A stretch of 64,000 nt of DNA, from contig OZ281495.1 in assembly GCA_965637545.1 (NCBI GenBank), forward strand, positions 28,396,001-28,460,000. The letters run 5' to 3'. The DNA is from Phallusia mammillata (lineage: Eukaryota). The translations under genes and the position numbers were made by a program. Position 1 is the stretch's first letter; every line of letters starts with the position of its first letter. This document shows, one piece after another, positions 1-31,491 of this stretch. The notes under the pieces were generated by a model. It was not told where the DNA came from. It saw only the letters and a program-made list of their open reading frames with translations, and searched no databases.

Positions 1-742
1 TTTGAAAAAAGGCGATTTTTGTGGACTTTGAGGAGAATTATAACAATACGTACAAACTATTAATAACATTCTGAGAAAAAATGGAACTAAGTTGTTTTCT
101 TTAGAAATGTGTTTTTCAACTTTTTTTTTCCATTTCCTTCACAGTATATGGGTCCACTTTTTGTTCTAAACATTTGTAAACGTAGGCGAATAATTAAATA
201 TTTTAAAGGTCATTGTGGTTAACATATGATTTAAACGAAAGGCGTCGACTTAAACTGACAACATCTAATTTGTGATGCGATAAACTCGCAGAAATTACAC
301 GTGCAAAATGTTTGTCACGAAAAAGAATTGCAGCCAACAAACGACTGCCCTAGGCAAAGGCATTAAAAAATCTTGTTATACCACGAGGAGCAAAACTGGT
401 ATTACCACGAGGCTCTTGGTTTAAGTTGGTTTTCTTGCGTGTATCCAATTAAAAGCTGCTGTCCTGATCGATTTTGTCCACTTATTTCGTAATGGCCTTT
501 TGGGGTAGCGTTTTTTAAAGTTTAAACAGGTGCAGAGTCCTAGAATGTAGATTGCTGATTCATACAAACCAGTATATATCCCCGTACCGTTTCCAAAGCT
601 TTAAACGATTTCACGGGTGCTTCGATTTTCTGGCTTTTTTAATCCTTTCCTGAGGATTTATGGCCAGGGAATAGCCCTCCCCACTCCGAATGAAACACAG
701 CTTGTGAATTTTTAATGTAACTAATTGCCCTCTTGTGCGTAG

Positions 743-2823
743 GTACCTGGTCATCGTGCACCCGTGCTGGTACGAAGCACATTACACGAAACGAAAGACT
801 TTCCTCGCGGTCCTACTGGTCTGGATCTGGTCGAACTTTTTGACCTCGCCCACATTGTTCGGTTGGAGCGGCCTGGGGTAAGATCTCAATCTCAGTCTAA
901 TGTGTTTTGTGTTTCTCAACACTTTTCTTAACACTTGGAAATGTATACATGATATACCTGTCCAATAGGCATTAATCTGCAAGTCCAATAAAACGCCAAA
1001 GCTTGTACTTTTTACAATCATACCGAGAGAAAATGTAAAATGTTACCAGGTTTCTAAAGTTTTTCTCTATTTTGGTAACACTAAAGTAAACTGTGAAAAC
1101 AAGTTTCTTTTTTTTGTAGTAGCTAGTTTTTTTAATTGTATAGCAAAGTGTGTTTCTTATAGTTTATTGCACGACGTGTAAAACTCCATCGTTCTAAATC
1201 CTTAAGTTTTTTTTTCGTTTGCAGTTACGACCCTAAAATGGTTGGCTGTGCGTGGGACGACCAGGCGGCCATAAGTTACAACGCTACTTTTATGACACTC
1301 GCTGTATTCGCTCCTCTAATTACTATATGCATCTGCTATGGGAGGTTATACAGGTGAGCTATGCGTTAATTTCAAAGATCCATCACCAATGTGCATGTAG
1401 AATTACACAAAGAATCATTGATATTTCACCACCAGAAAAAAGGATTTTCCCAGCAGAATTACATTTTGTAATAGGTTTACGGACGCCATCATACTGCTGT
1501 ACTGTGAAAACGTTGCTTAGTTTTATATGTAATAAAGCGTTATAAAAGCTTACAGCCATTAGCTGACAAGTAATTAGCTACAGAGTGTGTACAGTGTTTC
1601 GGCCAAGAACGTACCGCCTTTTTTTAAAAATTGTCGGTCACAACCAGTTTGAAGATTTGTCAGACATGTGACCTTAAATGATCTTTCTAGGTGCGTACGT
1701 AATCGTGGTCGGTGGATCCGAAGTTTTGCAGTCTCTCCCTCTAATGTGCTGCGCCAGGCCAAGGAGCGGCGATCCTTGCAGAAGGAAATCAACCTATTGA
1801 AGACCCTGGCTACGGCACTGGCCTTCTTCATTTTATGTTGGATGCCGTACGCCTTTAGCGTGACCTTTGACCCGAAGGGTATTCCCCACAAGTCCAAACA
1901 GGTTCGTAGCGCATAGCGTTTGTGAATGATTTGAAAACATTTTGCGTTGGGAAATTTTAACTTTAGCGGGTTTGGACGATGAGCAGCATTGTTTGAAGGA
2001 AGTACGGTTACAATTGCTGACTGTGGGTTGTTTAATTTTCAATTTCATAGGATTTCCTGTATTAGTATTACCAGGACAAACGCATGAAAGTTGTCAATGA
2101 CGCTGCTACAACCCTTTTAATAACACAACTTTATGCGCAATTAGCCTTAGATTAGAACAAATCACGCATTTGGGTAAATCCAAAAACTTAGAGAATGAGA
2201 TCAAGTTTGGAGAATGTAAATAAAAAACATCACATAAGCATGAGTAAGAAATATTGTGGCCTAATAAACATATAAGAGATTTTTTTCCCGGTGGCAAGTG
2301 TTTTCACCTCAGCGGTTTACTATGTTAAAAAACTTTAATTTAAATGTTTGTGATAGCAGTACAGTTCATGCGAAATACAACCTACAATAAATACGTAATT
2401 GTATCATGGGACCTCTGCACATAACGAAAGTGTACCCTAGATAAATTGGTTAGTGACAATATGTTTTTCCTTGCAGATCGTAGCCTGGTTTGGCCTCTCA
2501 AACTCCGCGGTAAACTTCATCGTGTACGGTGTAATGAACACCACCTACAGAAAAGGTTACAAGAACCTGCTTAGGCTGCTCTGTTGCTGCAAGAAGCCAA
2601 CCTTGTCAAGGTACGAGGTGTGGATCTTTGATTCTTTCTAATTATTTATAAGTTGCCATTTATAAATTGGGGGGATATTTACTTTTATTTCTGATTGGGG
2701 TCGTCAGCCACAGATTTGTTACCTAATTGACTTCGGTTTGTTGTTTATTTTAGACTTCCATCGGTTTTTCGACATTACAACGAATCGCGGAACAACAATG
2801 AACATGCGTCGCCTCATCGGTAA
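743..2823 (+). CDS. Class A (rhodopsin-like) GPCR paralog 1, NRY-type (melatonin-receptor-like); 5'-partial, TM1-TM3 exons lie upstream of the window
   Basis: GT-AG exons 743-877 (RYLVIVHP..TM4..GWSGL), 1225-1353 (ECL2 Cys, TM5), 1691-1901 (ICL3, TM6 CWMPY), 2477-2610 (TM7 NSAVNFIVYGVMN, helix 8, CCC) and 2754-2823 (C-tail). The 3' end is uncertain because the stop overlaps a cg|gtaag donor. Exon phases match paralogs 2 and 3. Confidence 0.88.
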
Positions 2824-8800: not shown

Positions 8801-9410
8801 TGCACGACAAAGACGCCTACTACATATAAGGTTTTGAGGCTTTGTTTAAACAAAATGACGTTGTCGCGCGGTTGTCGCGCGGTGTACTGAGGTTTCTTTA
8901 TGATTTATTTGTAGTTTCCGACTATTTACAACCGTTATGTCATGGTTTGGCTTGTGCCGTGTTGTGACTTGTACATGTCAGCTGCAATGGCAATTTGTTC
9001 CCCCCGCCCAGAGAAGTTTGACCTTAGAAATGGACACTGAGAGCAAAAAAGGCGACAGCAGGTTAAATAAAAAGCCCTGTATCACAGAAGGTGTTAGATA
9101 GTTGGCTTCGATAGGATAGGCGACGAACGTATATTGTTGATTTGCATCAAGATTCTGCTACAATTTTATAAGATTGTTACTCGGTCTATGCAGTCGGGAA
9201 TTGGTTATGTCATTTATATGTTCAATTTCACAAAGTAAACGTTTATATATTAAACTAAACCCTCAAACTCTATAAACTTGTAATATCAATGGACCTTTAC
9301 GTATTTTTAGTTTGTAAGCTTTGAAAAATCGAAGTACCGTTTTGGTCTTTGACAAACTATATCTAACTCGATGTTTACATTTGTTTCAGCAGATTTCCAA
9401 TAAAGTAATC

Positions 9411-12400
9411 ATGTCTAATATATCAATGGACGGTCTGGAATGCACTAATACCTCTGGTCCATACTGTGGAATATACGATGCCGGACGAATTGTTGACGCC
9501 ATATTCCTGGTGATCTTAACAGTTGTCGGCACTGTTGGAAATTTCCTTGTCATCTTTTCTATCATCTGCGCAAGAAGAGTGAACAAGAATGGAAACGTAT
9601 TCATTATTAATCTGGCTTTGGCTGATTTGATTGTGAGTATTTGGAAAGGAATGTTTAGGCAATAAGAAAAAATATTAATTAAAGACAGTTTTGGTTGTAC
9701 GTTTAGGTTTTGATTTGCTTAACTTAAAGTCGCAACAATGAACATGGTAAAAAACAAGGATTTTTTGACTATTTTTTATGCATATTTGATCATATCATAT
9801 TAAATACACATTTTAAAGTATAATATCTTGTCAAACAAGGCTTGTGGTATAAATGAAAATAGAAAATGTGTAAGTTTATGTTCAGGATAATTAATAAACT
9901 TATGTGTTGTTAAACGTGAGCGAAAAATACAACACACTGCATTCCGATAACGATTGGTTCCGGCATGTCCAGGATACCTCTGTGGTTAACAATCCTCGAA
10001 TCGATGCTAATGTTTTAACGCTAAACGGTCGATACACGCATTTTTAGCTAATTTACCAAAAAAAGAGAAAACGTTTGAACACGCCGTCAATATCATGGCT
10101 TGAATATAATAAAAACGCAGAAGAATCATGGTGGTTTGTGTTGGATAGCTCGATATTCAGAATAAAAATTAATATACAGCGGTTTATGCTTTCGTGTCAA
10201 ATAAATATTCATGTTTCCTTTTTGAGCGAAATTATTCATTCCTAAATAAATAAAAATGTAACTTAAGACTTGTTCCTGTTTTATTGAATTTTTAATCCTA
10301 TTGCTAAATTATTGCTTTAAAACATACCAAGGTGAACTGCTGCATGTTAAAATGGTGGGTAATTGTTTGTGGCTGTTACTTTCACAAATTAAACAAGATA
10401 ATACTTTTTGTTTACTGTATTGGGTAATATTACTTCGGGGAAAAGTTGGAGTAGAAAAAACTGGCAAATAGTTACAATTAAGCACCCCAGGAGCAGCATA
10501 GCATTGTAACTCACTCCAGACAAAATTTAGACTAAAACAATTGTAAGAAATACGGTCCAACAATTTCTTTGTACCAGAATTCCGTGCGAAAACAATTTAT
10601 TACTTTAAACTGTCGTGTTTCAGGTGACCGGATTTTTTACCCCAACAGTGGTTGCAAACGTCATCCGAACAACAAATGCCTTGAGTGACACAGCCTGTGA
10701 CGTAGCCGGTTACCTAGTAACAGTGTCTTGTGTGTGTTCCGCAAGCAACCTCATGAGTATAGCATTCAACAGGTAACCATATTTTTATTCTACATTCTGC
10801 GCAAATCAATCTAAACAAAATCGCCATAGTCTTATGAATGTTATCTAATGTGTAAGCCTTTAGAATATTGCAATGAATTACTCCCAAAAACGCAAGAGAT
10901 AAATTATTTTAATCGCTCATAGCACGACACGACAATATTTTTAGTTTTTTAGATTATCCTACATTTGATTGCCGGGGGATTTGAGAATAGTACTTGTTTT
11001 TTTCACTTAAAACTGTACCACCAAGCAAATCTTGTATTTGGACAAAGGAGAATTTGAGCCTTATCAATTGCCCTCAATAAAAAGATTTATATCTGATCAC
11101 GAACTATATCAGATAGGAAATCTACGAAATTCCCCTAAAAAGATTGTTACGGAAATATTTTATCGTTTCTGGTGGTGCAGCGATAGCAATACACACAACA
11201 CACGACTATATATTTCCATGTTTCAGGTATTGGGCTGTGGTTCGGCAACCAACATACAACAAGGTTTTTACAAAGCGTCGCATCTACCTCCTCGCCATTT
11301 TGAACTGGGTGTGGGCAAATCTTCTTATTATGCCAACCCTTCTCGGATGGACCCATTTGGAGTAAGTTAAATACTTGCATTATTGCATTGGTTCGTAAAA
11401 AACGTCTGATCGAACACCCATGGATTTGGGGTCTAATTAAGCTAGTGTAAAGCCACAAGGCTACGAAAATGTGTACTGCACTTAAAGTGGCTCTAAGTTT
11501 ATCTATACTGTTTTTTAAACGTTTATGTGTGTGACCAAAGCTTGTACAATGGTTTTCGGTGTACTCCGAACCTTATTTGTCAGACGAATAACGACAGAAC
11601 ATTGGCCATAGACCAAGGTTATCATGCCGGACTATAGCACACGCTCCTGTGCTTATTCCTTATATAATTCGTATGGATATAGTAAATGCATGTGTATAAT
11701 TTCGAAGACATAATTGCTAGTCATTGAAGCTATACTTATAATAGATATGATCATAGTACCTTTATGATACGAACTGTCAACACGCCTACTAAGAAACGTT
11801 TAATCTTACATTTGCATTTTGTAGTGTAGCATACAAACATCCGGTGTGGTAACTAGAACTAAGTTGACCGATTCGAGTTTAAGCACGTGTGGATTAATTG
11901 TCTTGCAGGTACGGAACAGGCATGATGCTCTGTTCATATGACAACGTCAGTGCACCCGGATATAACGCGTTTGTGTTGATTCTGGCTATTGCCTTTCCAA
12001 TTACTGCCATCGTGTTCTTCTACTGGCGTTTATTCAGGTAAGCCAGAAAAACTTACAAAATAACTTCTTTTTAAACATTCGAAATAAATAAGGAATAAAT
12101 TTATAAACGGTCTACTGAAACTGAAATATAATAAAAGCACACTTTAATTTAAAAACAAGATCAGAAAAAGTCAGTTTTTGAATGAACAAAAAACGAGAAA
12201 TTAACGGATAAATTAAATAAAAGTAAAATCTATTGTCTGTAAGGCCAAAACAAACTCGTTTATTGATATCGCAATGAAACTGAAAACAGAAAGGTAAGCA
12301 AAACAAAAAACGTAATCGTAAATGAAAATCAAAAATGATACTAATATGCGCTCGAGGCGTGGTAATACCTTCTTTAACGTAATATGCCTGAATTCTCTTG

Positions 12401-14133
12401 TGATGAATAAACCACATATATGTGGAAGATTGGCGCTAAATACTCTCGCATTGCCGACTTATAAGAGGATTTAAGTCTACATATGGGTATAAGTTACAAC
12501 ACAAACTTAATTGCTGATGTCAAATATTTTTGACAGTTTCGTCAATAGGAATACTTAGTATTCACATTAATCTGCTGGTGGTCTTCAAAAAACAGTAAGA
12601 TCAACACATTACAACATTCTGAAGTAAAAAACGTGTTTAATTGATTTTCTTAAGTTGTAATAAAACTTGCTCTACCTATATCCGTTTACCATTTTTGAAC
12701 CTGTTTTGGTTGATTTATGTAATGTTGGAAAATGGTAGTACACATATTGACTGTAGCTTCGAATGGTTTAAAGAACACAATAGCAGACGCTAGTCTTTAA
12801 GAACTTAGTCAAATAAACCATCTCATTTGATAAGCAGTTTCGATTACCCAAAGTTCTGAATTTCCCACTACTACTAAACAGTGAGCATTGGTCCACCAAT
12901 ACCAGGCATATTCACACACCAGCCTTTTTAAGTGTGCCAAATTGTCAACTTGGACAACTTTCTGGGTGGTTTAATACTTTACTAGTTGTATGAATTAAAA
13001 ATTAAAATCAGCAATTAACATTCTGACATAAAAAACAAATGTGGCTATTCCACCAATCAAAGAGATCTAAACATATTTCTTTTGACTCAGTGCTGTTAAA
13101 AAGCGGGGGAAAGTTGTGAAAAAGATGAGCAGTCATACAAATTCCGGACTACGTAATATGGAACAACGCCAGCTGAAGAAACAATTGAACTTGGCTAAAA
13201 CACTTTCAATCGCTGTCATTGCTTATGTTGTTTCCTGGACTCCATACGGTATCCTTATCATTCTACCGCAAGATCTGGTCCCCCCACTTGCAAAACGAGT
13301 AAGTAAAGAAGTTTTTAATTAAAACTATTTCTTCTTTACAGTCAAGCTTTAATTAGGGCCGTTTGCTCATTTGCCAAGGAAGCAAAGAGACCATATCCTC
13401 CATTTTTTTTAAATTGTTCATATTCATAAAGCACAGTTAATACGTTTCTCTCGTCGTGTACATTCTCTAACACGAATTTATTTTTTCTTTAGATTGCATC
13501 TCGCTTGATCCTCACGAATTCGGTGGTAAATTTCATAATTTACGGTGTGATGAACCCGACTTACAGGAAAGGATACAAAAGGCTGTTGTCCTTTATGTTC
13601 TGTTGCAAAACCGGAAAAGGGTAAGTTTTGAGACCTTTGGTGATCAAACATTTCAAAGTCAAAACACCAAATTACAATAATGCAACCAATACCATCTGTC
13701 CGACCCGACCTATTGAATTTCACATATTTGTTATTAAACTTATCTTGAAAAAGATATATAAACTCCTTATTCGGCCTAAGTTAATTATACTATGTAAAAG
13801 CTAAGGTTGGTATTTTTTAGAAAATGGAAGAGCGAAATGGACTCCAGTACTACTGGCCAACCTTCCACTGTCAGAAGCCGATTCAAGTCAAGATTTATGA
13901 AATCCGTAAGTACACTCATTACTTTATGTTTTCGAGAAATGTTTTGACCAAAACACAAGCTTGCTTTTTGAACGATTTTTTTTCCTTTACAATTTTGTCA
14001 TTGAAAAATGGTTAAAAGCGTTTGCATTTCTCAGGGTGAATCGCCAGGAAAATCGCCTAGCTCGGTGTCAAGGAAAGGCAATTTCCGCTCAGGAACACCC
14101 AGCGGTTCCAACGACACTTTGAATGCTATTTGA
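9411..14133 (+). CDS. Class A GPCR paralog 2, NRY-type (melatonin-receptor-like), complete, 8 coding exons, about 384 aa
   Basis: Exons 9411-9632, 10624-10772, 11227-11361, 11909-12037, 13091-13298, 13493-13620, 13821-13905 and 14035-14133, all GT-AG and in frame (1155 nt). Motifs: TM1 GTVGN, TM2 NLALAD, TM3 Cys..FNRY, TM4 W, ECL2 Cys, TM6 SWTPY, TM7 NSVVNFIIY, Ser/Thr-rich C-tail ending DTLNAI*. Confidence 0.92.
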
Positions 14134-15986: not shown

Positions 15987-16409
15987 ACGCCAGGCCCATT
16001 GAAGGCGCTATACCGAATCAGCCGGTCACCAAGCATTCACCACCATATGGCAAGGCGTAGGCTAGAAAAATCTAGCCTGCGGTGGGATTCGAACCCACGA
16101 CAGGAGTCTTTCCGTTCGGCGAACGGTGCTTGTGATTCGACTTTCGGCGGATTCTCCACTGGCCCTGTGTAGCTCAGTTGGTAGAGAGCGAGTCCCGGAA
16201 AGACTCCTGTCGTGGGTTCGAATCCCACCGCAGGCTAGATTTTTCTAGCCTACGCCTTGCCATATGGTGGTGAATGCTTGGTGACCGGCTGATTCGGTAT
16301 AGCGCCTTCAATGGGCCTGGTGTACTGTGATTTATAAATGAGTGTGCTGTGATCGCTGGTCTGCATAGACGCTTCAGGGCTGATCCCAGTTATGAATTTA
16401 TGTTCATCT
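15987..16409 (+). mobile_element. tRNA-derived SINE insertion with 5' inverted duplication, flanked by a 14-bp TSD
   Basis: Direct repeat taaaagccttagat at 15973-15986 and 16410-16423. tRNA-like head at 16162-16235 (TAGCTCAGTTGGTAGAG A box, GGGTTCGAATCCC B box). Perfect inverted arms at 15990-16114 and 16196-16320. Confidence 0.85.
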
Positions 16410-21800: not shown

Positions 21801-24351
21801 TCTTTTTGATTTGAGGTTTATCATCGCTAAATTCACAGGCATATGGCTTTAGGTACTGCCATACATCTGTCATAAAAACTCTCATGCAGGCGTTTAACGT
21901 TTTTCTCCTTAAAAAATAGTAGCTACTGGCTATATAGTATAGTTGTAAAAGCGACACGATTGGTTCTCTAATACGTATGTTTATCATAAGGGTGTTTATA
22001 AGCAAAACCGTTTAATGTTGACTTCTTTGAAGGCCAGATTGGTTATGCGTGTACCGAATTAAATTTAAAAATGCATTTAATTATGCCACTAAAGAAAAAC
22101 TAAAATGAGCATGTTTAGTGCCCGTTGGGTTTACGCATTGTAATTGCACATTCCTTTTTACATTAGATTAGACTAGAGCGTGCTGTTCTAACCATCTAAT
22201 TGGGTTAGGTTACATTGACATCCTTCGCTGCAATTCCCTGAAATATGGTTGGTAGTAAACAACGCACTACGCTGACTGTATACATGTGTAATATGTAACC
22301 TCACGTCGAACTTCCGTTCAAGCAACAAAACAAGCTATAATTAAACTCCGCACCGTTAGCAGTATTAATCACGACAATACGTCATCATAGGAGAGTCGAG
22401 CGGCGAAATTCCGGTTACCGGATGAAAGTAGTCAACAAACTGACCACTAAAAGATATTAAACGAATTTATTGCAGTTTTTACCCAATGTGTCATAAAGGT
22501 TTGATTCTAGGCATTCTCTTTTTTCGGATGCATCATAGATTGACATCAAAGTAGTCACAATCACACCGAATGCATATGAATGTGTTTGTAAGTACTATGT
22601 ATGAAATACATATGACACTGATTCATTGAATGATATGTACATTTGCAATCCGAATTATAGAGCAACAATTTTATAGCAAAACTACGAACATTGCTATTCT
22701 GCAGCAAGTCCATAGGAAACGAACTTAAATAGCTTTGGTCTTACTCGGAAAAGGCTTGGATCAGCCATCGCGCTTTTAGGGGTTACGTCATAGGATTTGT
22801 GCCTTTTTGGTCTATTATCTTCGACGTCTGTAGAACCAGGCTGTCTTGTGGTGATTCAGGCGAACCCAGATGCATTGTGACGTCACATTGGGTTGGCATT
22901 CTATGAAAAGTCAGGTGTGATTTGGCTGAACTACAACGCCTTGTGCGTTGAAATTGCACCACGTGGTATAGGAGACTGTTTGTCAAGTGATTTAGAGTGG
23001 CGGTATCTGCAGTTTGAAGGTTGTGTGATAAACCTGGTGTTATCAGGAACGTGGCTTTACAAAGGCAAACTCAAACGCTGTATCACCACCGTTGCCATAC
23101 CAATGTCACGATACAGGCGTGGTAAATGACGTTGGAAAAGATGTTATGTCGAGACATCTAAATGTGTATGTCCGCACGTTTATTTGTTTCAGCATTGTTG
23201 ACATTTTCTTTCAATCTAACAGCTTTTGGTCATGACGGCAATCAAATGTGCTGCATTTTAATGTAAAATATACAACCAGTGGCCTTTTCCTACTGCAGTA
23301 AGTTCATATAATGTGAAGCTGCCTTTAGTGTTGACTTTGTTTTTGCTAACCTAAGTCTAAATGGAGTAATGGATTGTTGAATTCTATTGCCCTTTCTTGT
23401 GTTTCAATCTCCTTGTGGCATTCATCAACTCTTGCGGAAGTCTTCATTGTAACCTACCCGTCTAGCCCTCAAGGTGATTAGCAGTTCACAGGACAGAAGT
23501 AGAAAACGAGAAATTCACGGAAGAAGTTGTTTAGTCAGTGTGGACCAGGAAACTGGCAGATAATGTGTTGCAAGGTGACTGTAAGGGCACACTGGCAAAG
23601 CTTTAAATACAGTTATGTATTTTGCAAGCATTGCCAGACCAGGTTTAGGTAACGGATGGAGTTAGTTCTTGTGGCCTGCTTAAGATGTTAACAGTACGGA
23701 ATGGACAAATGCATGTTTTATTTGTGTGATAAGAAGTAAGAAAATTTATACATCATTTAGATGGCACTTTGTCAAAGCCTTTTCAGAGAAACGTTTAAGT
23801 GATCGGGGCCCTTAAAACGCGTTTAATTATGCATTAAGCTCTTTTAAGCCCTAAGACATTGCATTTGATTTTTAATGCAATGTATTTTAAAGATGTTGTA
23901 AAACTTTTGCTGTTGTCAAGTATTGGTGAATTAAAGTTACGTTACAATTTAGTTTTGTTATATGCTTAATGCGTTAACTCAGAAAAGGCACCTTTACCCG
24001 TTTTAAACAGTGCTCTATTATTAGCAACTAGTGTTCTGACTGGACAAAATGGAAGGATATGAGATTCTGAAACATTGCACGATTACAATATTGCCCGTTA
24101 AAAGCGTCTGGCCAAAATCGTGGAATTGCCGCAAAGAGTTTTTTTGAGTTTTATACGTGGGTTTAGTCTACGAGCACATTGACCTTATATGCGTGTGTAC
24201 AACAGATTGGCTCCAACTGAACTGTTATTTAACCCTGTCGCATTAATTGTAAGGTGTGCTTATGCATGTCTGATGCATAATAAGGGTCCATTGCTAAACT
24301 CATTGTATGTTTTATTTAATGGCTTGCAGAAACTAAATAGTAAGAGTAAAA

Positions 24352-27300
24352 ATGTCAACGCTTTTATTCAATATTACCGTTGCTACGTTGACGACCCTTG
24401 ATGAACATCATGATGAATTAGAAACTCACGGGCATCACGATCACAGTCACGATCACCACTGGGAGGATCGGAGCCAGGCCGAAATCGGAATTGAAGTTTT
24501 CTTCCTTGCCCTGATTGCAATTGTTGGCACTTTTGGAAATCTCATTTTAATTCTTTCGATCGTGATACTAAAGAGAGTTCACAAGAATGGAAACATATTC
24601 CTTGTGAATCTAGCAGCAGCGGATATGTTGGTAAGTTTTGTTAACTGTTAACATTTACAACTACTCGCACTTCGTGTAAAGACCGCAGCACCCAAGAAGT
24701 GACTTGTTTGTTAAACTCAAGTTTAGTAATAGCGGGATTCAGTTAATGTGACAATATATTGTAAAACAATTAAAATTCTGTACCAGCTGGCGAAAGAGAT
24801 GACTTTCGCTTTGACCAACGCCATTATGAAACAATTAGTTAATTAACGCAGCCTAAACGCCAAACCTACGTTTAATTGCCCATTAAAGGCCCATTTCCTT
24901 ATGTCAACAGTTAAGGAGTATGACAGTTGAAACGTTAGGACACCTGCGAGAAATTACATTACCAACATAACGATTTTAATCCTTTCAGGTCTCGTGTGTC
25001 TGTGTGCCAATTGTAGCCGCCAACGCCGCTTTGGGAATGAATGTACTTCCCGAAATCGGCTGTACCATCATGGGATATTTGACCATCGTGTGTTGGGCAA
25101 ACTCCTTGTCAAACTTGGCGTTTATAGCAGCAAATAGGTAAGCTGTGGTTCAAAGGTGTTTAAAAATATCTAAAAAGGTTATTGGAATACACAAGGATAC
25201 ATTATCTTAATATTTCTCTAATCCACATTGGGTTGTTGTATTTGTTTGCATGGACATACTGCATAACGGCAGAAAAATTGATGCATAGTGCATATTGCTT
25301 AGGTACAGCATGGACATATGCGTGGGTGCAACTCCATAGCCCACATATATAAGTAAACGTCGCGCTGTTTCTGAGTAAAAACACGGGCTTGTATCCCCCA
25401 TTGCGATGTGTTGACGACTGCAGATCAATGTATGTTTAATGTAGGTAAATCGATCGATTGCTCATTGGTATTAATGACGGCTTTAATTAGAAACTATTTT
25501 AAAGTAGAAGGGTCAGCGCAAAACAAAATACCAAACAAATTCACCTACTTTTCGGTTTGAAGACATTTAGTGGCATATACAGTTTTAGTAGTCGCTTGCC
25601 TGTAAAAGTAGATATGAACCCGCATGCCACAAGATTACAATTACATTAATTCTTGCCAGGACCGCCAATTAATCATCTGGTGACAAACTCTTTTATAACA
25701 AACATTAGTGGAGTTTGCATGCCCGAATTTGTCTTATGATTTAAACGATATGTGCCATCATATATTTAAACGATATGTGCCATCATATGGGCATCAATTT
25801 TTTTGGAATCAAAACTATGGATGTAGTTGGAATTCTTTTATAACGGGAAATTTTTTTTTTAACGAAAACATTGTTTATTGTTTATTGAGTAATGCGCGCG
25901 GTTTATATGCAAACGAGCACGTATTGGCAAAAACTTGTCCATTAGTGTTGTTATTCCGACGTTAATGAATGTGTTTGCGTTGTTGATGAGAAACTTAAAC
26001 GAACTCAGTTGACTTTTGCGCGAGTAGCCACATTTGGTAGGGAATTTATTCTTTGTCTTTTTGTAACTATGCTATAAAAAAGATAAAAATTTTACAATTA
26101 TTAGGTTTTCGCAAAATACCCTTTTTTTTATTTAAGTATTTGCGTAAAATTTACTATTATGAACTACCCACTATGGCCATTATGAATTGGCTACTGTGGC
26201 CAATTTCAAACTACATGCAACCGATTTGGTTAGAGTGTGAATTGTTATTTTTGATTGCCTAAATCTCAGGCAGTTTAATTAGCTTGCCTTTAACTTTTAT
26301 TCTATGAAATCCAATCACAATTTTCTGCTAATCCGTAATGTATGGTTGGAAATGTCACGGATTTTCCCACTGTTTTTGTCCAAAATCCTATAAATAGCGG
26401 GTCAAAGGTTAATTCGCATGCATATTTTATCTTCGTGTTGCGGACATCCTATGTCTACGACCATGTTTGGTACATAATACATACTCGTACTGATATGCGG
26501 CCCCCGATTGACTTTCTTTTGTCGTTTAAAGACTTCGTGACTATGATTTTTTCTTGTGTCGTAATGGCATTATGGTGTGTGTAATGCAACGAAAATACAA
26601 CGTTACGCGGTCTTAAACTCAGTTGTCCTTCAAAACACCATCGGTATAAAATAGCCAAGTTAACTCACGTGCCTTTAATAACAGATGAAAGGATGCATTA
26701 TACGATCTTAAATTAAGTGGTATAATTAATCTTTGCACTGGCTATAGAAAGAAGTGAAAATTACAACGGTGTTTTAACACCGCATATTTAAATTCTTAGC
26801 ATTGAAAATAAACAAACTTTGTCAGCCAAAATGCATAGACAGTATTAGTGCAATAAATGTGTTTTTTATTTTGCCGACATTAGCATAGCTTTCTATATTT
26901 AAATGTGATTTGTCATGCATTGAAACTTTATGTTGACGCAATAACAAGTGCCACTGTGCAATGGCCGCCGCATTACTAACTAAAGCGATGACGAAATGTT
27001 TTTGCGTGATGTTATAACACACTGCTTTTGAGCTAATTCATACGCTCTTTATACCCTACTCGTTTCGTCACACTGATTTTTATGATCTCCATAGATACTG
27101 GGCAGTTGTCCACTACGAGTCACACAGCCGATATTTCTCAAAGAAACGAACAATCGCCATGGTCTTGGTCACTTGGCTTTGGGCAAACCTTCTTATTATG
27201 CCCGTTCTGACTGGCTGGAGCAAACTGGAGTAAGTTTTTCGAAAACTATTATTTTGAAACAACAACCTACCAACTAAGTATAACATGACAGACTCTTATA

Positions 27301-29052
27301 TAGGACAAGTCGTAAGAATAATTTTCAAAGAAATTATTTGTTTTCATGACAAAATATTTTAAACAACTAGCCAAATTTTAAAACATGTATATAATACCGC
27401 GCCACATAAGTCATGTAAACCGTACGTCATTTATTTCAAGCAAGTTTACGTCATAACGAATGGAGGTTATCTATTTGTATCCTGGATGTTATTCATTTGT
27501 ATCCCGGTGTACAAAACAGTCAAAACAGTCCCGGTGTACAAAACAGTGTTTTTACCATATCCAAAGTATTATCCACGACTCCAGGTACCATACCGCGAAA
27601 AAACGCATCTTCCGTTATTTTTAATGTTGTTACCATAAAGTAATACAATTCTTGAAATACATCTTGTACCTCGTGGGCTCGAGTCCTGCGGAAAGGTTAT
27701 CTTTTTAATCTGTACCTTGCGGTGCTAGAATACATTTGATTCGGTATGGCGATTTCCAGGTCTGGTATACTATATGTTCCTGTTTAAATTTTCTATCCAA
27801 AAATGAATCATTTTGAAAGCAGGAAGCCATATTAATAATTTTTCTTTTTCATATTTAGGTTTGATGCAAAAATGATGATGTGTTCATGGCATGACACCGA
27901 GACGCCAGCTTTTAACGCTTGTATGATGGTTGCTGTGTTTATTCCAGTCATTATTATCATCGTTTGTTACTGGAGACTAGTGCAGTAAGTACACGTGCTA
28001 ATTTTATGACAATAAATTATGTGTACCTTACAATATTTTGCAATGTAATTTTTAATTTTAATTTTACAGTTCCGTACGCAAACGAGGAAAATGGGTTCGA
28101 AGCATCAGTCAAACTTGCAGCGCACAATCTCAAGGAACCAATAAGAAAACGGTTCGAAAAGAAGTCGATTTAATGAAGACTCTTGGCGTGACTGTTGCCG
28201 TTTTTCTTCTTTTCTGGCTTCCCTATGGTCTTATGCTAAGCATTAATCCTGAGCAAATCCCAGCTATCGGAGAGAAGGTAAAAGGTTGAGACGTTTAGTG
28301 AAAAGTCTACGTATTATTCTTTAGTTTATTTTGTCAAAAAAGCTTTACCTTTTCAAACTAATATAACGATATTATGCAGTAAAAAAATCTTAGAATACAC
28401 ATTTATCTGTCGCTATTGGAAACACGCTAATTTGCGGCCATCAAGTTTACGTGTAACCAGTGTAAAATACTATGTACAACTTTGTAGTTTGACTGTTATG
28501 TAAATCATTTGATGAATTGTCGACGGTTTTTTTATACCTTGTTTTTATCTTGACACTTTATTTCTTACAAAAAGTTAACAAATCGTTTTAGATAATCGCT
28601 TGGTTGGCATTGAGCAGTTCTTCAGTCAACTTTATCATTTACGGTGTTATGAACCCAGTGTATCGACGAGGTTATGTGAAACTTTGGAATAGAGTGCGCC
28701 ACTGCACCTGCAAACGGTTCAAGTATGTACTTTTTGTGAAAGCTGTAACTAAACAAATGAAACTGTTACAAAAATTGTACAAAATTTTGGTCCCACTTAC
28801 ATGCATCAAACTAATTTGGGTGTTTTTTTTAATTTGAGTGTATTTTGCCACTTTGAAAAGAAAACACTTTTTCTCCTATTTTTGGAAAAGAAGAGATAAC
28901 CCACAATAAATTAAATTGGAAGCTCCGTTCAGTTTTGTTTATATTACAACTTGCAACTCTGTTACAGGGCCGACAACGACAGCAGCTCTACTTTCTCAGT
29001 AAAACAGACCAAACGCATGTCTACGGCATCCCAGGTTTGTGAGTCTGAATAA
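24352..29052 (+). CDS. Class A GPCR paralog 3, NRY-type (melatonin-receptor-like), His-rich N-terminus, 7 coding exons, about 370 aa
   Basis: Exons 24352-24630, 24989-25137, 27095-27229, 27859-27984, 28070-28277, 28592-28722 and 28968-29052, all GT-AG and in frame (1113 nt). Motifs: GTFGN, NLAAAD, ANRY, FWLPY, SSVNFIIYGVMNP. The N-terminus contains DEHHDELETHGHHDHSHDHHWED. Confidence 0.92.
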
Positions 29053-29256
29053 ATATAAACGTCGATTTTCACTTACAATATGTAAATTGTGCATAAACTT
29101 TTAATCATCCCTCTGAAATCTCAAAATATAATTTACCTTTGTTACGCTTTTATGAAAATCGCACTTGCTGATGCCAACAATGCTTATCTTCACTGATTAA
29201 TGATGATGCCAACCTGGACATTTCCAACTATAAAGTTGTCATTTGCAGCACGAAAG

Positions 29257-29430
29257 GCAGACAAAGTGCCTGTGCTTCGAGTTTAGGCGGCCCTACCACT
29301 GAGCCTGTGTAGCTCAATTGATAGAGCGCAAATCATAGAAAGGCTCCTGTCATGGGTACGGTTTCCATCTTAGACTATTTTTTTAGCCTGTACCTTGTAA
29401 CATTTGACAAAGGTTTGGTATCGTAGATTT
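29257..29430 (+). mobile_element. Diverged copy of the same tRNA-derived SINE family as the 16.1-16.4 kb element
   Basis: gtttaggcggccctaccactgagcctgtgtagctcaattgatagag..ctcctgtcatggg..ttttagcct aligns by eye to ctttcggcggattctccactggccctgtgtagctcagttggtagag..ctcctgtcgtggg..ttctagcct. Boundaries are approximate. Confidence 0.7.
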
Positions 29431-30071
29431 GCCAATGCTATAACATTTCGTTTATTTTTTAAATTTCTGTTTTTTTACCAGATGTTTTTTATCATTTTAG
29501 GCACATAGAAAAGTCAGTCGATTATCCACCCCACAACTGAACTTCGGATTTAACAGTGGGGTCTCCAGCAAGGATTTTTCCGACGACAGACAGTGCAAAA
29601 GCGTTGCATAAAAATACTGGTGACCTGTTTTGAGAGATAAATACGTGATTTGATTTTACATCGAAGGACAAAGGTAGTAGGCAAAACCACAAAGAAACCA
29701 CCCCGAGAACATCTTTCAGTCGCACAGTTTATAAACGAAAACCAAACAGCATAAGTTTTATTTTTAGTCGACCGTCTAAAGTTTTGAAGGTATTAGCTTC
29801 ACTTGCACTTGTTGATGGAATGTGTTGTCTATATGTCTGTGTTGTAGGCACAAATAAAACACACACATGCAGCAATTAGGAAATGGGCATTCTTACATGT
29901 TTGCATTAATGACTGACTCAAAGATACCTCACAACAAGCCACCGGTTTGAATTTTGTTTCTGTGGTGCCACAGATGTCATATGAACACCAAACCTTAAAA
30001 TTTAAAGTTGGATGATCTGTAGCATGATTAGTAGAAGCGATTGCCATTCTTATTCAGTCAAAAGTCTAAAT

Positions 30072-31226: not shown

Positions 31227-31491
31227 TTAGGAGATGATGCACCTTTTTTTTCTTTTGTTGTTCCGGTTCTTGTTGCTTAATTTCCAATTCTTGTTGTCTT
31301 CACCGCTCAGTTTCCATGTTGGTCTCGGTGTTCTTCCAGAAGCAGATAGAACCACACACGACACAAACAACCAGGAAGATCACAACCACGATCATGCCCA
31401 TATATTCACTCGCCAGTTTTTCACTTAACTGAAGACTAAACGATGCACTAAGAACGGTAACAGCGATTGCCAATCCAGTTACTTCAGGCAT
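31227..31491 (-). pseudogene. TM + charged helix + CaaX microprotein, copy A (in-frame TGA plus 1-nt homopolymer shift)
   Basis: MPEVTG..YMGMIVVVIFLVVCVVCGSICFWKNTETNMETER*RQQELEIKQQEPEQQ. Removing one A from the A8 run gives KKKRCIIS* (stop at 31227-31229). Confidence 0.55.

What the first reader, a model, noticed from the sequence alone, without database searches (positions are those of the whole stretch)
24400..24468. His/Asp-rich extracellular N-terminus on a melatonin-receptor-like GPCR: candidate metal or pH sensor
Seen: DEHHDELETHGHHDHSHDHHWED has 9 His in 18 residues and 9 acidic residues in 23, directly before TM1. Paralog 2 lacks it. Established: (HX)n His/Asp tracts bind Zn, Cu and Ni in ZIP/ZnT transporters and His-rich proteins, and extracellular His residues mediate proton or zinc sensing in GPR4/GPR68/GPR39. 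Inference: neofunctionalisation of one tandem paralog as a metal- or pH-modulated receptor. This would be notable if the host is an ascidian, a group known for metal accumulation and acidic cells.
Basis: partly seen in the sequence, partly recalled or inferred. Interest (0 to 1): 0.7.

Follow-up and report, generated by a model that had tools for sequence, protein, structure and literature searches.

The report
Histidine-rich tail on sea-squirt orphan receptor
A receptor gene of the vanadium-accumulating sea squirt Phallusia mammillata really does encode, and express, a histidine- and acid-rich outer tail just before its first membrane helix. That makes it a reasonable but untested candidate for a metal- or acidity-tuned receptor.

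Summary
Window 24400-24468 (+) encodes DEHHDELETHGHHDHSHDHHWED, residues 17-39 of a rhodopsin-class GPCR. It has 9 His in 18 residues and 9 acidic residues in 23.

- **Expression:** Spliced contigs from four studies carry the tract without a mismatch. They confirm the introns and begin with the ascidian spliced leader, so the ATG at 24352 is the first AUG of the mRNA.
- **Identity:** The protein is identical to UniProt A0A6F9DFD9 of Phallusia mammillata, the ascidian in which vanadium accumulation was first reported.
- **Position:** The tract lies in a tail predicted to be disordered, between a conserved N-glycosylation sequon and a conserved Trp. It ends three residues before TM1.
- **Family:** The receptor belongs to the ascidian tandem "melatonin-receptor-like" group (NRY, NFIIY). 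It lacks the melatonin pocket residues, the amine Asp and the opsin Lys, so it is an orphan.
- **Relatives:** None of about 110 relatives has such a tail. These include the window paralog, a second Phallusia paralog, and Clavelina, Ciona and Styela homologues. The one exception is an unplaced metagenomic GPCR fragment. No one-to-one ortholog was available.

Metal or pH modulation is chemically plausible but untested. A neutral low-complexity insertion is almost as likely. This scan had already noted the neighbouring receptor cluster.

The parts
24328..24329 (+). AG of the spliced-leader trans-splice acceptor; the mRNA body starts at 24330
   Evidence: Contigs of runs X4 and X8 carry GAGTACGGG + ATTCTATTTGAATA before 24328. 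Together with the genomic AG this gives the 16-nt leader published for Ciona. The leader is absent from the window.
24330..24351 (+). 22-nt 5' UTR without any ATG
24352..24630 (+). Coding exon 1 (93 codons): N-tail, TM1, ICL1 and the start of TM2
   Evidence: ORF. Donor GT at 24631. Joint 24629/24988 is present in 4 runs. Pfam 7tm_1 matches residues 62-93.
24370..24378 (+). N-glycosylation sequon N7-I-T, conserved as NxT in relatives; marks the tail as luminal/extracellular
   Evidence: Alignment A2.
24400..24468 (+). The His/Asp/Glu-rich tract, residues 17-39
   Evidence: Present with 0 mismatches in spliced contigs of 4 studies.
24460..24462 (+). Trp37, the conserved Trp of the juxtamembrane 'PW' motif that closes the variable linker
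   Evidence: Alignment A2.
24989..25137 (+). Exon 2 (rest of TM2, ECL1, TM3; ends inside the Arg codon of NRY)
27095..27229 (+). Exon 3 (completes NRY, ICL2, TM4)
27859..27984 (+). Exon 4 (ECL2 with the disulfide Cys and W-H-D, TM5)
28070..28277 (+). Exon 5 (ICL3, TM6 with FWLP)
28592..28722 (+). Exon 6 (TM7 with NFIIY, helix 8)
28968..29052 (+). Exon 7, C-tail. It reads through to the stop at 29050-29052 (370 aa), or is spliced at 29034/29035 in the database isoform.
   Evidence: Loose end of the contigs found at 28969. Translation.
29501..29611 (+). Exon 8 of the 401-aa isoform (P0002 / A0A6F9DFD9)
9411..13620 (+). Tandem paralog A (six exons recovered, 3' end not defined). It is 40% identical and has the same intron phases. 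Its N-tail has no His.
741..2596 (+). Tandem paralog C, only its last four exons; the 5' part lies before the window

Best explanation
**What it is.** The tract is a real, translated, lineage-specific His/Asp/Glu-rich segment of the extracellular N-terminal tail of a fast-evolving orphan class A GPCR of Phallusia mammillata. The tail is predicted to be disordered. The receptor is one member of a tandem 'melatonin-receptor-like' cluster.

**Where it sits.** It fills the variable linker between a conserved N-glycosylation sequon and a conserved juxtamembrane Trp. It ends three residues before TM1, at the mouth of the ligand pocket.

**What its chemistry implies.** It has four HxH and three HH units flanked by carboxylates. 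Such a segment should chelate Zn2+, Ni2+, Cu2+ or Co2+ (possibly vanadyl). With generic pKa values its net charge moves from about -7 at pH 8.1 to about 0 at pH 6.

**Most likely role.** I think it is a modulatory metal- and proton-binding tail. It would change how the N-tail packs over the extracellular loops, and so tune ligand access, basal activity or surface delivery. It is probably not the primary agonist site.

**Shown:** coding, expression, first-AUG status, position, uniqueness among the available relatives, and an intact receptor core.

**Inferred:** metal and proton binding, and any effect on signalling.
For: - **Sequence and statistics:**
- **Expression:** spliced contigs in 4 runs of 4 studies carry the tract with 0 mismatches. 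They also carry a template-switch tail plus the spliced leader directly upstream, so M1 is the first AUG. The next in-frame Met is inside TM2.
- **Identity:** the product matches Phallusia mammillata A0A6F9DFD9.
- **Structure:** the AF2 model has pTM 0.76, residues 1-32 at pLDDT below 50, and TM1 starting at residue 42.
- **Topology:** relatives share the NxT sequon and the 'PW' motif.
- **Intact core:** GN(1.50), D(2.50), the TM3-ECL2 Cys pair, NRY, FWLP and NFIIY are all present.
- **Not a fresh microsatellite:** His and acidic codons are mixed and the DNA repeat is weak. This fits selection on composition.
- **Charge:** the calculated charge switch is.
- **Divergence:** gene B has a long terminal branch.
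- **Precedent:** GPR39 binds Zn2+ through N-tail His17/His19 plus Asp313 and is pH sensitive (PMC8070507).
- **Host:** P. mammillata is the species in which high vanadium in ascidian blood cells was first reported (PMC11043195).
Against: - There are no functional data of any kind.
- The tract is absent from every available relative, including the closest one (Clavelina, 46% identity), a second Phallusia paralog and paralog A. There is therefore no evidence of conservation.
- The region it occupies varies in length and sequence across the family. Such regions commonly accept neutral low-complexity insertions.
- A residual hexamer repeat points to an origin by slippage.
- The expressing samples are coded, so a link to blood cells, metal handling or acidic compartments cannot be made.
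- The long branch could equally reflect relaxed constraint.
Confidence: 0.42

Rival explanations
1. The tract is a neutral, or nearly neutral, low-complexity insertion. Replication slippage of a CAY-GAY-type hexamer expanded inside a linker that tolerates any sequence. The tract may bind metals in a test tube but has no sensing or regulatory role.
For: - The linker between the sequon and the conserved Trp differs in length and sequence in every relative.
- The tract is confined to this one gene among about 110 relatives.
- A hexamer repeat remnant is present.
- No ortholog carrying the tract was found.
Against: - Codon heterogeneity and interspersed L, T, G and S residues argue against a recent pure repeat.
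- 18 of 23 residues are still His, Asp or Glu.
- An unrelated GPCR fragment from a metagenome has a very similar tail placed directly before TM1 (P0072). This hints at recurrence.
- The tract is unavoidable in any functional product, and the gene is expressed in all four studies that were laid; twelve further runs of the same studies hold about the same share of the stretch's words.
Confidence: 0.4
2. The first 16 residues are a cleavable signal peptide. The mature receptor would then start Asp-Glu-His, giving an amino-terminal Cu(II)/Ni(II) (ATCUN, X-X-His) site backed by further His residues.
For: Residues 1-16 are uncharged and moderately hydrophobic, and His is the third residue after Leu16. 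This is inference only.
Against: - The hydrophobic core is short and is interrupted by Asn and Thr.
- Leu at position -1 is unfavourable for signal peptidase (general knowledge).
- The NxT sequon inside this stretch is conserved in relatives as a normal, uncleaved GPCR tail feature.
- No signal-peptide predictor was available.
Confidence: 0.05
3. The tract acts in biogenesis or protein-protein contact, not in sensing. For example, it could control ER export or surface delivery, or bind an extracellular partner or matrix component through His-metal bridges.
For: GPCR N-tails commonly affect surface delivery (general knowledge). The tract is disordered and highly charged.
Against: There is no specific evidence. 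Paralogs work without it.
Confidence: 0.1
4. The tract is an annotation or assembly artefact: not part of the mRNA, or not translated.
For: None found.
Against: Four independent studies give spliced contigs with the tract, 0 mismatches, and the leader 22 nt before the ATG. A transcript-derived database protein is identical.
Confidence: 0.02

Closest known systems
Non-vertebrate deuterostome melatonin-receptor-like (mtnr-like) GPCRs, e.g. the three to six genes reported for Ciona intestinalis (PMC2396169, PMC7541902)
   Same: - The same motifs are present (NRY, N-x-I-I-Y in TM7).
- Closest hits are ascidian proteins that NCBI names 'melatonin receptor type 1A/1B/1C-like', from Clavelina, Ciona and Styela.
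- The genes are arranged in tandem, and Clavelina accession numbers are adjacent.
- All fall in one ascidian clade in the tree.
   Different: This member has the longest terminal branch among the ascidian members of known source in the tree. It is the only one with a His/Asp-rich tail. At the top of TM7 it has E-K where most relatives have K-K.
Vertebrate melatonin receptors MT1/MT2 and GPR50
   Same: Class A alpha-group fold, with NRY instead of DRY and N-x-x-x-Y without Pro. The MT1 alignment spans TM1 to helix 8 (93 bits). The nearest ESM Atlas structure cluster is MTR1B.
   Different: - Pocket anchors are not conserved: N162(4.60) to V, Y187(5.38) to F, H195(5.46) to V, Q181 to D. The roles of N4.60, Y5.38 and H5.46 come from PMC8786939; the roles of Q181 and F179 come from memory, since that paper does not mention them.
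- Scores to 5-HT1A and squid rhodopsin are equal or higher.
- The gene has 7-8 coding exons, against the two-exon gnathostome gene (PMC7541902 abstract).
GPR39, the Zn2+-sensing class A receptor
   Same: Working analogy: His residues of the N-terminal tail (His17, His19) plus an acidic residue near ECL3 (Asp313) bind Zn2+, and the site is pH sensitive (PMC8070507).
   Different: There is no specific sequence relationship: GPR39 is not among the best 60 PDB matches. GPR39 uses two His residues, not a 9-His tract. Activation of this receptor by a metal is untested.
Proton-sensing GPR4/GPR65/GPR68
   Same: Extracellular His residues titrate near neutral pH (general knowledge, not tested here).
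   Different: These belong to a different class A branch, and their sensing His residues are scattered over helices and loops instead of forming a tail tract. None is among the best 60 PDB matches.
(HX)n loops of ZIP/ZnT metal transporters and His-rich metal-storage proteins
   Same: Alternating His with Asp/Ser next to a membrane helix. Weak, sub-threshold Pfam matches to CbtA and DUF1980 arise from this composition.
   Different: The tract sits on a receptor, not a transporter. The Pfam matches are far below their cut-offs and show composition, not homology.

Membership tests
Rhodopsin-class (class A) GPCR, Pfam 7tm_1 | Seven-helix fold with a PF00001 match and the core microswitch residues | tested here: met
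   PF00001 is precomputed for P0002. Exon pieces match consecutive parts of the profile. The AF2 model shows seven helices plus helix 8, pTM 0.76. GN, D2.50, the TM3-ECL2 Cys pair, NRY, FWLP and NFIIY are all present.
Melatonin receptor family (MTNR1A/B/C, GPR50) | NRY in place of DRY at the end of TM3 | tested here: met
   AANRYWAVVH aligns to MT1 AINRYCYICH.
Melatonin receptor family (MTNR1A/B/C, GPR50) | NAxxY in place of NPxxY in TM7 | tested here: inconclusive
   The receptor has NFIIY. The Pro is absent as in MT1/MT2, but the Ala is Phe (motif from PMC8786939).
Melatonin receptor family (MTNR1A/B/C, GPR50) | Ligand-pocket residues N4.60, Y5.38, H5.46 and ECL2 Gln181/Phe179 | tested here: not met
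   In the phmmer alignment to 7vgy_A these are V, F, V, D and W respectively.
Melatonin receptor family (MTNR1A/B/C, GPR50) | Closer to melatonin receptors than to other class A families | tested here: inconclusive
   PDB scores: 5-HT1A 95.8 bits, squid rhodopsin 94.4, MT1 93.1, GPR50 92.3. The first ESM Atlas hits are melatonin-receptor clusters, but these are leads only. No tree including vertebrate sequences was built.
Melatonin receptor family (MTNR1A/B/C, GPR50) | Two-exon gene organisation of gnathostome mtnr genes | tested here: not met
   There are seven or eight coding exons, and the first intron lies in TM2. The vertebrate organisation is from the PMC7541902 abstract.
Aminergic receptors (the database name is '5-hydroxytryptamine receptor-like') | Asp3.32 that pairs with the ligand amine | tested here: not met
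   In the 5-HT1A alignment the Asp of ...IALDVLC... faces Thr of ...GYLTIVC....
Opsins | Schiff-base Lys in TM7 | tested here: not met
   In the squid rhodopsin alignment the Lys of FAKASA faces Leu of LALSSS.
Zn2+-sensing GPR39 / proton-sensing GPR4-65-68 | Specific sequence relationship to these receptors | tested here: not met
   None is among the best 60 of 525 PDB matches. The resemblance is functional analogy only.
Metal-binding (HX)n tract | Repeated HxH/HH units with flanking carboxylates in an exposed, flexible segment | tested here: met
   Four HxH and three HH units lie in residues 19-36, with pLDDT below 50.
Metal-binding (HX)n tract | Measured metal affinity and a functional consequence | not testable with these tools
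   This needs peptide ITC/IMAC and receptor assays.

The most novel reading that the evidence does not exclude
This receptor is a genuine metal-sensing (Zn, Cu, Ni or vanadyl) or proton-sensing GPCR. It would have arisen independently of GPR39 and GPR4/GPR68, by insertion of a His/Asp tail into a duplicated melatonin-receptor-like gene in a metal-hyperaccumulating ascidian lineage. A similar tail on an unrelated metagenomic GPCR (P0072) would then mark a recurrent route to such sensors.
Probability: 0.15. Interest if true: 0.75.

Novelty: new variant of a known kind. Interest (0 to 1): 0.42.

Why it matters
If the tail modulates signalling, it would be a second, independently evolved solution for sensing metals or protons through a class A GPCR N-tail. 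It would sit in the species where biological vanadium accumulation was discovered. It would also give ascidian metal biology its first candidate cell-surface sensor.

The tract is short, deletable and chemically simple, so the hypothesis is cheap to test.

If the tail is neutral, the locus is still a clean example of a low-complexity insertion tolerated at the mouth of a receptor. It is also a well-supported gene model, with a trans-spliced 5' end and two 3' isoforms, for an orphan receptor that databases name '5-hydroxytryptamine receptor-like' although it lacks the amine-binding Asp.

Tried and rejected
1. **Ortholog search.** A word search with exon 1 for exon-sized products found nothing. 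The exhaustive HMMER search with exon 1 gave 102 hits. None was closer than 62% identity over TM1-TM2, and none carried the tract except P0072/P0111. Orthologs in Phallusia or Ascidia relatives are simply not in these libraries.

2. **Tree.** The tree of 24 family members left gene B in an unresolved ascidian polytomy. Orthology to Clavelina P0004 (46% identity) could not be shown.

3. **P0072.** This is the metagenomic GPCR fragment with the tail MDHDHFGHDHEFHSDHNHSH. Its contig is 1.7 kb, its organism is unknown, and it has no intron where the Phallusia genes have one. I treat it as a separate occurrence, not an ortholog.

4. **A second His-enriched frame at 31348-31401.** This is a non-coding frame that appears to lie opposite a hydrophobic ORF on the other strand. 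It is unrelated.

5. **Pfam CbtA and DUF1980 hits** (E 0.04-0.05). They are below threshold and driven by composition.

6. **Signal peptide and ATCUN idea.** Kept only as a 5% rival.

7. **The HDEL string inside the tract.** It is not at a C-terminus, so it is not an ER-retention signal (general knowledge).

8. **Literature.** Searches for His-rich GPCR tails, His-rich ascidian metal proteins and Phallusia melatonin receptors found nothing on this receptor.

9. **Expression level and tissue.** Only contigs of coded runs were available, so depth cannot be interpreted.

Full report
**1. Observation**

Window 24400-24468 (+) reads DEHHDELETHGHHDHSHDHHWED in the frame of the ORF 24352-24651. Residues 19-36 hold 9 His in 18, and the 23 residues hold 9 Asp/Glu.

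The rest of the protein has 6 His in 324 residues. The binomial tail for such a window is about 1e-11 to 7e-11. No other stop-free 18-residue stretch in any frame of the window exceeds 6 His, and 50 shuffles of the window reached at most 7.

The DNA is not a clean microsatellite. Tandem Repeats Finder reports only ATCACG x3.8 at 24434-24456, with score 32 and 76% matches. His is encoded by 3 CAT and 6 CAC. The acidic residues use GAT, GAA and GAG.

**2. Gene model and expression**

Comparison with a tandem paralog located six conserved exons. Canonical splice sites give a 370-residue seven-helix protein.

Sixteen runs of four studies hold about 0.20 of the sampled words of 24200-28900. The exons make up about 0.22 of that stretch.

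Contigs of four of those runs, one per study, were laid on the stretch. They are 1.4-1.8 kb long and cover exons 1-6 with 0 mismatches. Their five joints are GT..AG at exactly the predicted places. The runs are labelled RNA only by a guess, but intron-less contigs show that they derive from cDNA.

Two contigs carry GAGTACGGG followed by ATTCTATTTGAATA immediately before 24328. With the genomic AG at 24328-24329 this is the 16-nt spliced leader ATTCTATTTGAATAAG, published for Ciona intestinalis (PMC1488885). From memory, the preceding bases look like the tail of a template-switch oligonucleotide. The leader is absent from the window.

The mRNA is therefore trans-spliced at 24329/24330. Its 22-nt 5' UTR has no ATG, so 24352 is the first AUG. 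The next in-frame Met lies inside TM2, so any functional receptor must include the tract.

The contigs continue from 28722 into an exon at 28968. From there the frame either runs to a stop at 29052 (370 aa) or is spliced at 29034 to 29501-29611. The spliced form gives the 401-aa database isoform.

**3. Identity**

An exhaustive HMMER search with exon 1 returned P0002, a 401-aa protein that is 100% identical over residues 1-93. It is identical to my model up to residue 365.

P0002 is UniProt A0A6F9DFD9 / CAB3254766.1, '5-hydroxytryptamine receptor-like [Phallusia mammillata]'. The host is thus an ascidian of the family Ascidiidae. It is the species in which Henze first reported high vanadium in blood cells (PMC11043195).

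**4. What kind of receptor**

Pfam 7tm_1 matches. The AlphaFold2 model, built from a 22-sequence alignment, has pTM 0.76 with seven helices and helix 8.

Against solved structures the scores are nearly equal for four groups:

| Structure | Bits |
|---|---|
| 5-HT1A | 95.8 |
| Squid rhodopsin | 94.4 |
| MT1 | 93.1 |
| GPR50 | 92.3 |

The two melatonin-receptor hallmark motifs are present in form: NRY, and a Pro-less TM7 motif (NFIIY, against NAIIY in MT1). The pocket residues are not conserved in the MT1 alignment (roles of N4.60, Y5.38 and H5.46 from PMC8786939; roles of Gln181 and Phe179 from memory):

| MT1 residue | This receptor |
|---|---|
| N162 (4.60) | V |
| Y187 (5.38) | F |
| H195 (5.46) | V |
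| Gln181 | D |
| Phe179 | W |

The aminergic Asp3.32 is Thr, and the opsin Lys is Leu. The receptor is therefore an orphan of the non-vertebrate 'mtnr-like' group. The literature counts three (PMC2396169) or six (PMC7541902) such genes in Ciona. This agrees with the earlier scan note s1-364054 about the cluster just upstream.

The window itself holds three tandem members. Paralog C (741-2596) is partial. Paralog A (9411-13620) shares the intron phases and three identical exon lengths. Gene B is the third.

Clavelina lepadiformis has an equivalent set with adjacent accession numbers.

**5. Where the tract sits**

In the model, residues 1-32 have pLDDT below 50, and the TM1 helix starts at residue 42.

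Aligned N-tails of 16 relatives share an NxT sequon near the N-terminus and a 'PW' motif about ten residues before TM1. In gene B these are N7-I-T and W37. The His/Asp tract fills the linker between them. That linker differs in length and sequence in every relative and is longest in gene B.

With generic pKa values the tail goes from about -7 at pH 8.1 to about 0 at pH 6.0. The tails of paralog A, Phallusia P0036 and Clavelina P0004 change by only about 1.5 units or less.

**6. Relatives**

Of 116 retrieved proteins, only P0002 and the P0072/P0111 cluster reach more than 4 His in an 18-residue window.

The closest full-length relatives lack the tract:

| Relative | Identity to gene B |
|---|---|
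| Clavelina P0004 | 46% |
| Clavelina P0069 and P0030 | 44% |
| Phallusia P0036 | 42% |
| Paralog A | 40% |
| Styela P0095 | 37% |

In a maximum-likelihood tree, paralog A groups with Clavelina P0069 and Ciona P0025 (support 92-93). Gene B falls in an unresolved polytomy with a terminal branch of 1.17. The corresponding branches are 0.27 for P0036, 0.49 for P0004 and 0.65 for paralog A.

No one-to-one ortholog is available, and an exon-sized search was blank. The tract is therefore younger than the split of Phallusia from the other sampled genera. Its conservation within Ascidiidae is unknown.

P0072 comes from a 1.7-kb metagenome contig of unknown organism. It starts MDHDHFGHDHEFHSDHNHSH and runs straight into TM1. 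It is 44% identical to gene B over TM1-TM2 and has no intron where the Phallusia genes have one. I read it as an independent occurrence.

**7. Interpretation**

Shown:
- The tract is coding, expressed and unavoidable in the product.
- It is extracellular by class A topology and by the conserved sequon.
- It is predicted to be flexible, lies next to the membrane, and is unique among the known relatives.
- The receptor core is intact.

Inferred:
- The tract chelates transition metals and titrates near neutral pH.
- This alters receptor behaviour.

GPR39 is a working precedent. It uses N-tail His17/His19 plus Asp313 and is pH sensitive (PMC8070507). It is not a relative of this receptor.

The mixed codons and the weak DNA repeat mildly favour selection on composition. 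The variable context and the absence from all relatives favour a tolerated insertion.

I put the modulatory metal/proton-binding tail at 0.42 and the neutral insertion at 0.40. Minor rivals are a biogenesis or partner-binding role (0.10), signal-peptide cleavage creating an ATCUN site (0.05) and artefact (0.02).

Any link to vanadium handling is speculation. The tissues and stages of the expressing samples are hidden.

**8. Verdict**

The protein is already in public databases, under a name that its sequence contradicts. I found no paper that discusses its tail.

It is a new variant of a known kind: a class A receptor with a candidate metal/proton-binding tail. Interest is moderate until binding and deletion assays, or orthologs from Ascidiidae, are in hand.

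Noticed in passing
window 741-2596, 9411-13620 and 24352-29611 (+): Three melatonin-receptor-like GPCR genes lie in tandem on one strand, with conserved intron positions and phases. Exons 2, 3 and 5 of A and B have identical lengths. The first gene is cut by the window start. An earlier scan note places more copies upstream.
   Followed up: partly
L001:1307-1621 (protein P0072; sister P0111): A metagenome contig (ENA ERZ27265005, 1.7 kb, organism unknown) encodes a GPCR first exon. Its tail MDHDHFGHDHEFHSDHNHSH runs directly into TM1. It appears to be a second, independent His/Asp-rich GPCR tail. Kinase exon fragments lie upstream on the same contig.
   Followed up: partly
window 24328-24351, and 9380-9410 for paralog A: Gene B mRNA is spliced-leader trans-spliced 22 nt before its ATG. 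Paralog A has a similar TTTCAG acceptor about 21 nt before its ATG, which suggests the same 5' processing. That was not checked with reads.
   Followed up: partly
window 29035-29500: The gene has two 3' ends. Exon 7 either reads through to a stop at 29052 (370 aa), or is spliced at 29034 to exon 8 at 29501-29611 (401 aa, the database isoform). The laid stretch ended at 28900, so the contigs could not say which form dominates.
   Followed up: partly
window 16162-16237 and about 29287-29370 (+): ARAGORN calls a tRNA-Ser(GGA)-like element downstream of paralog A. A related copy, 67% identical in translation, lies in the last intron or 3' region of gene B. This is probably a tRNA-derived SINE family.
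   Followed up: no
gene B residues 297-299 (window about 28269-28277 and 28592-28594): At the top of TM7 most relatives have a basic K-K pair, while gene B has E-K. In ECL2 gene B has W-H-D where most relatives have W-D-D, although Styela P0095 also has W-H-D. These may be co-adaptations of the extracellular face.
   Followed up: partly
protein P0001 (2073 aa): A database protein matches the exon-1 query in 33 separate stretches. It looks like a run of many tandem TM1-type exons or genes fused by gene prediction.
   Followed up: no
window 25244-25413 (-): Run X1 has a short, low-depth contig (170 nt, depth 2.5) on the opposite strand inside intron 2 of gene B. It could be a repeat or an unannotated transcript.
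   Followed up: no
window 31300-31420: The + frame reads EDHNHDHAH here. It is not a metal-binding tract.
   Followed up: partly
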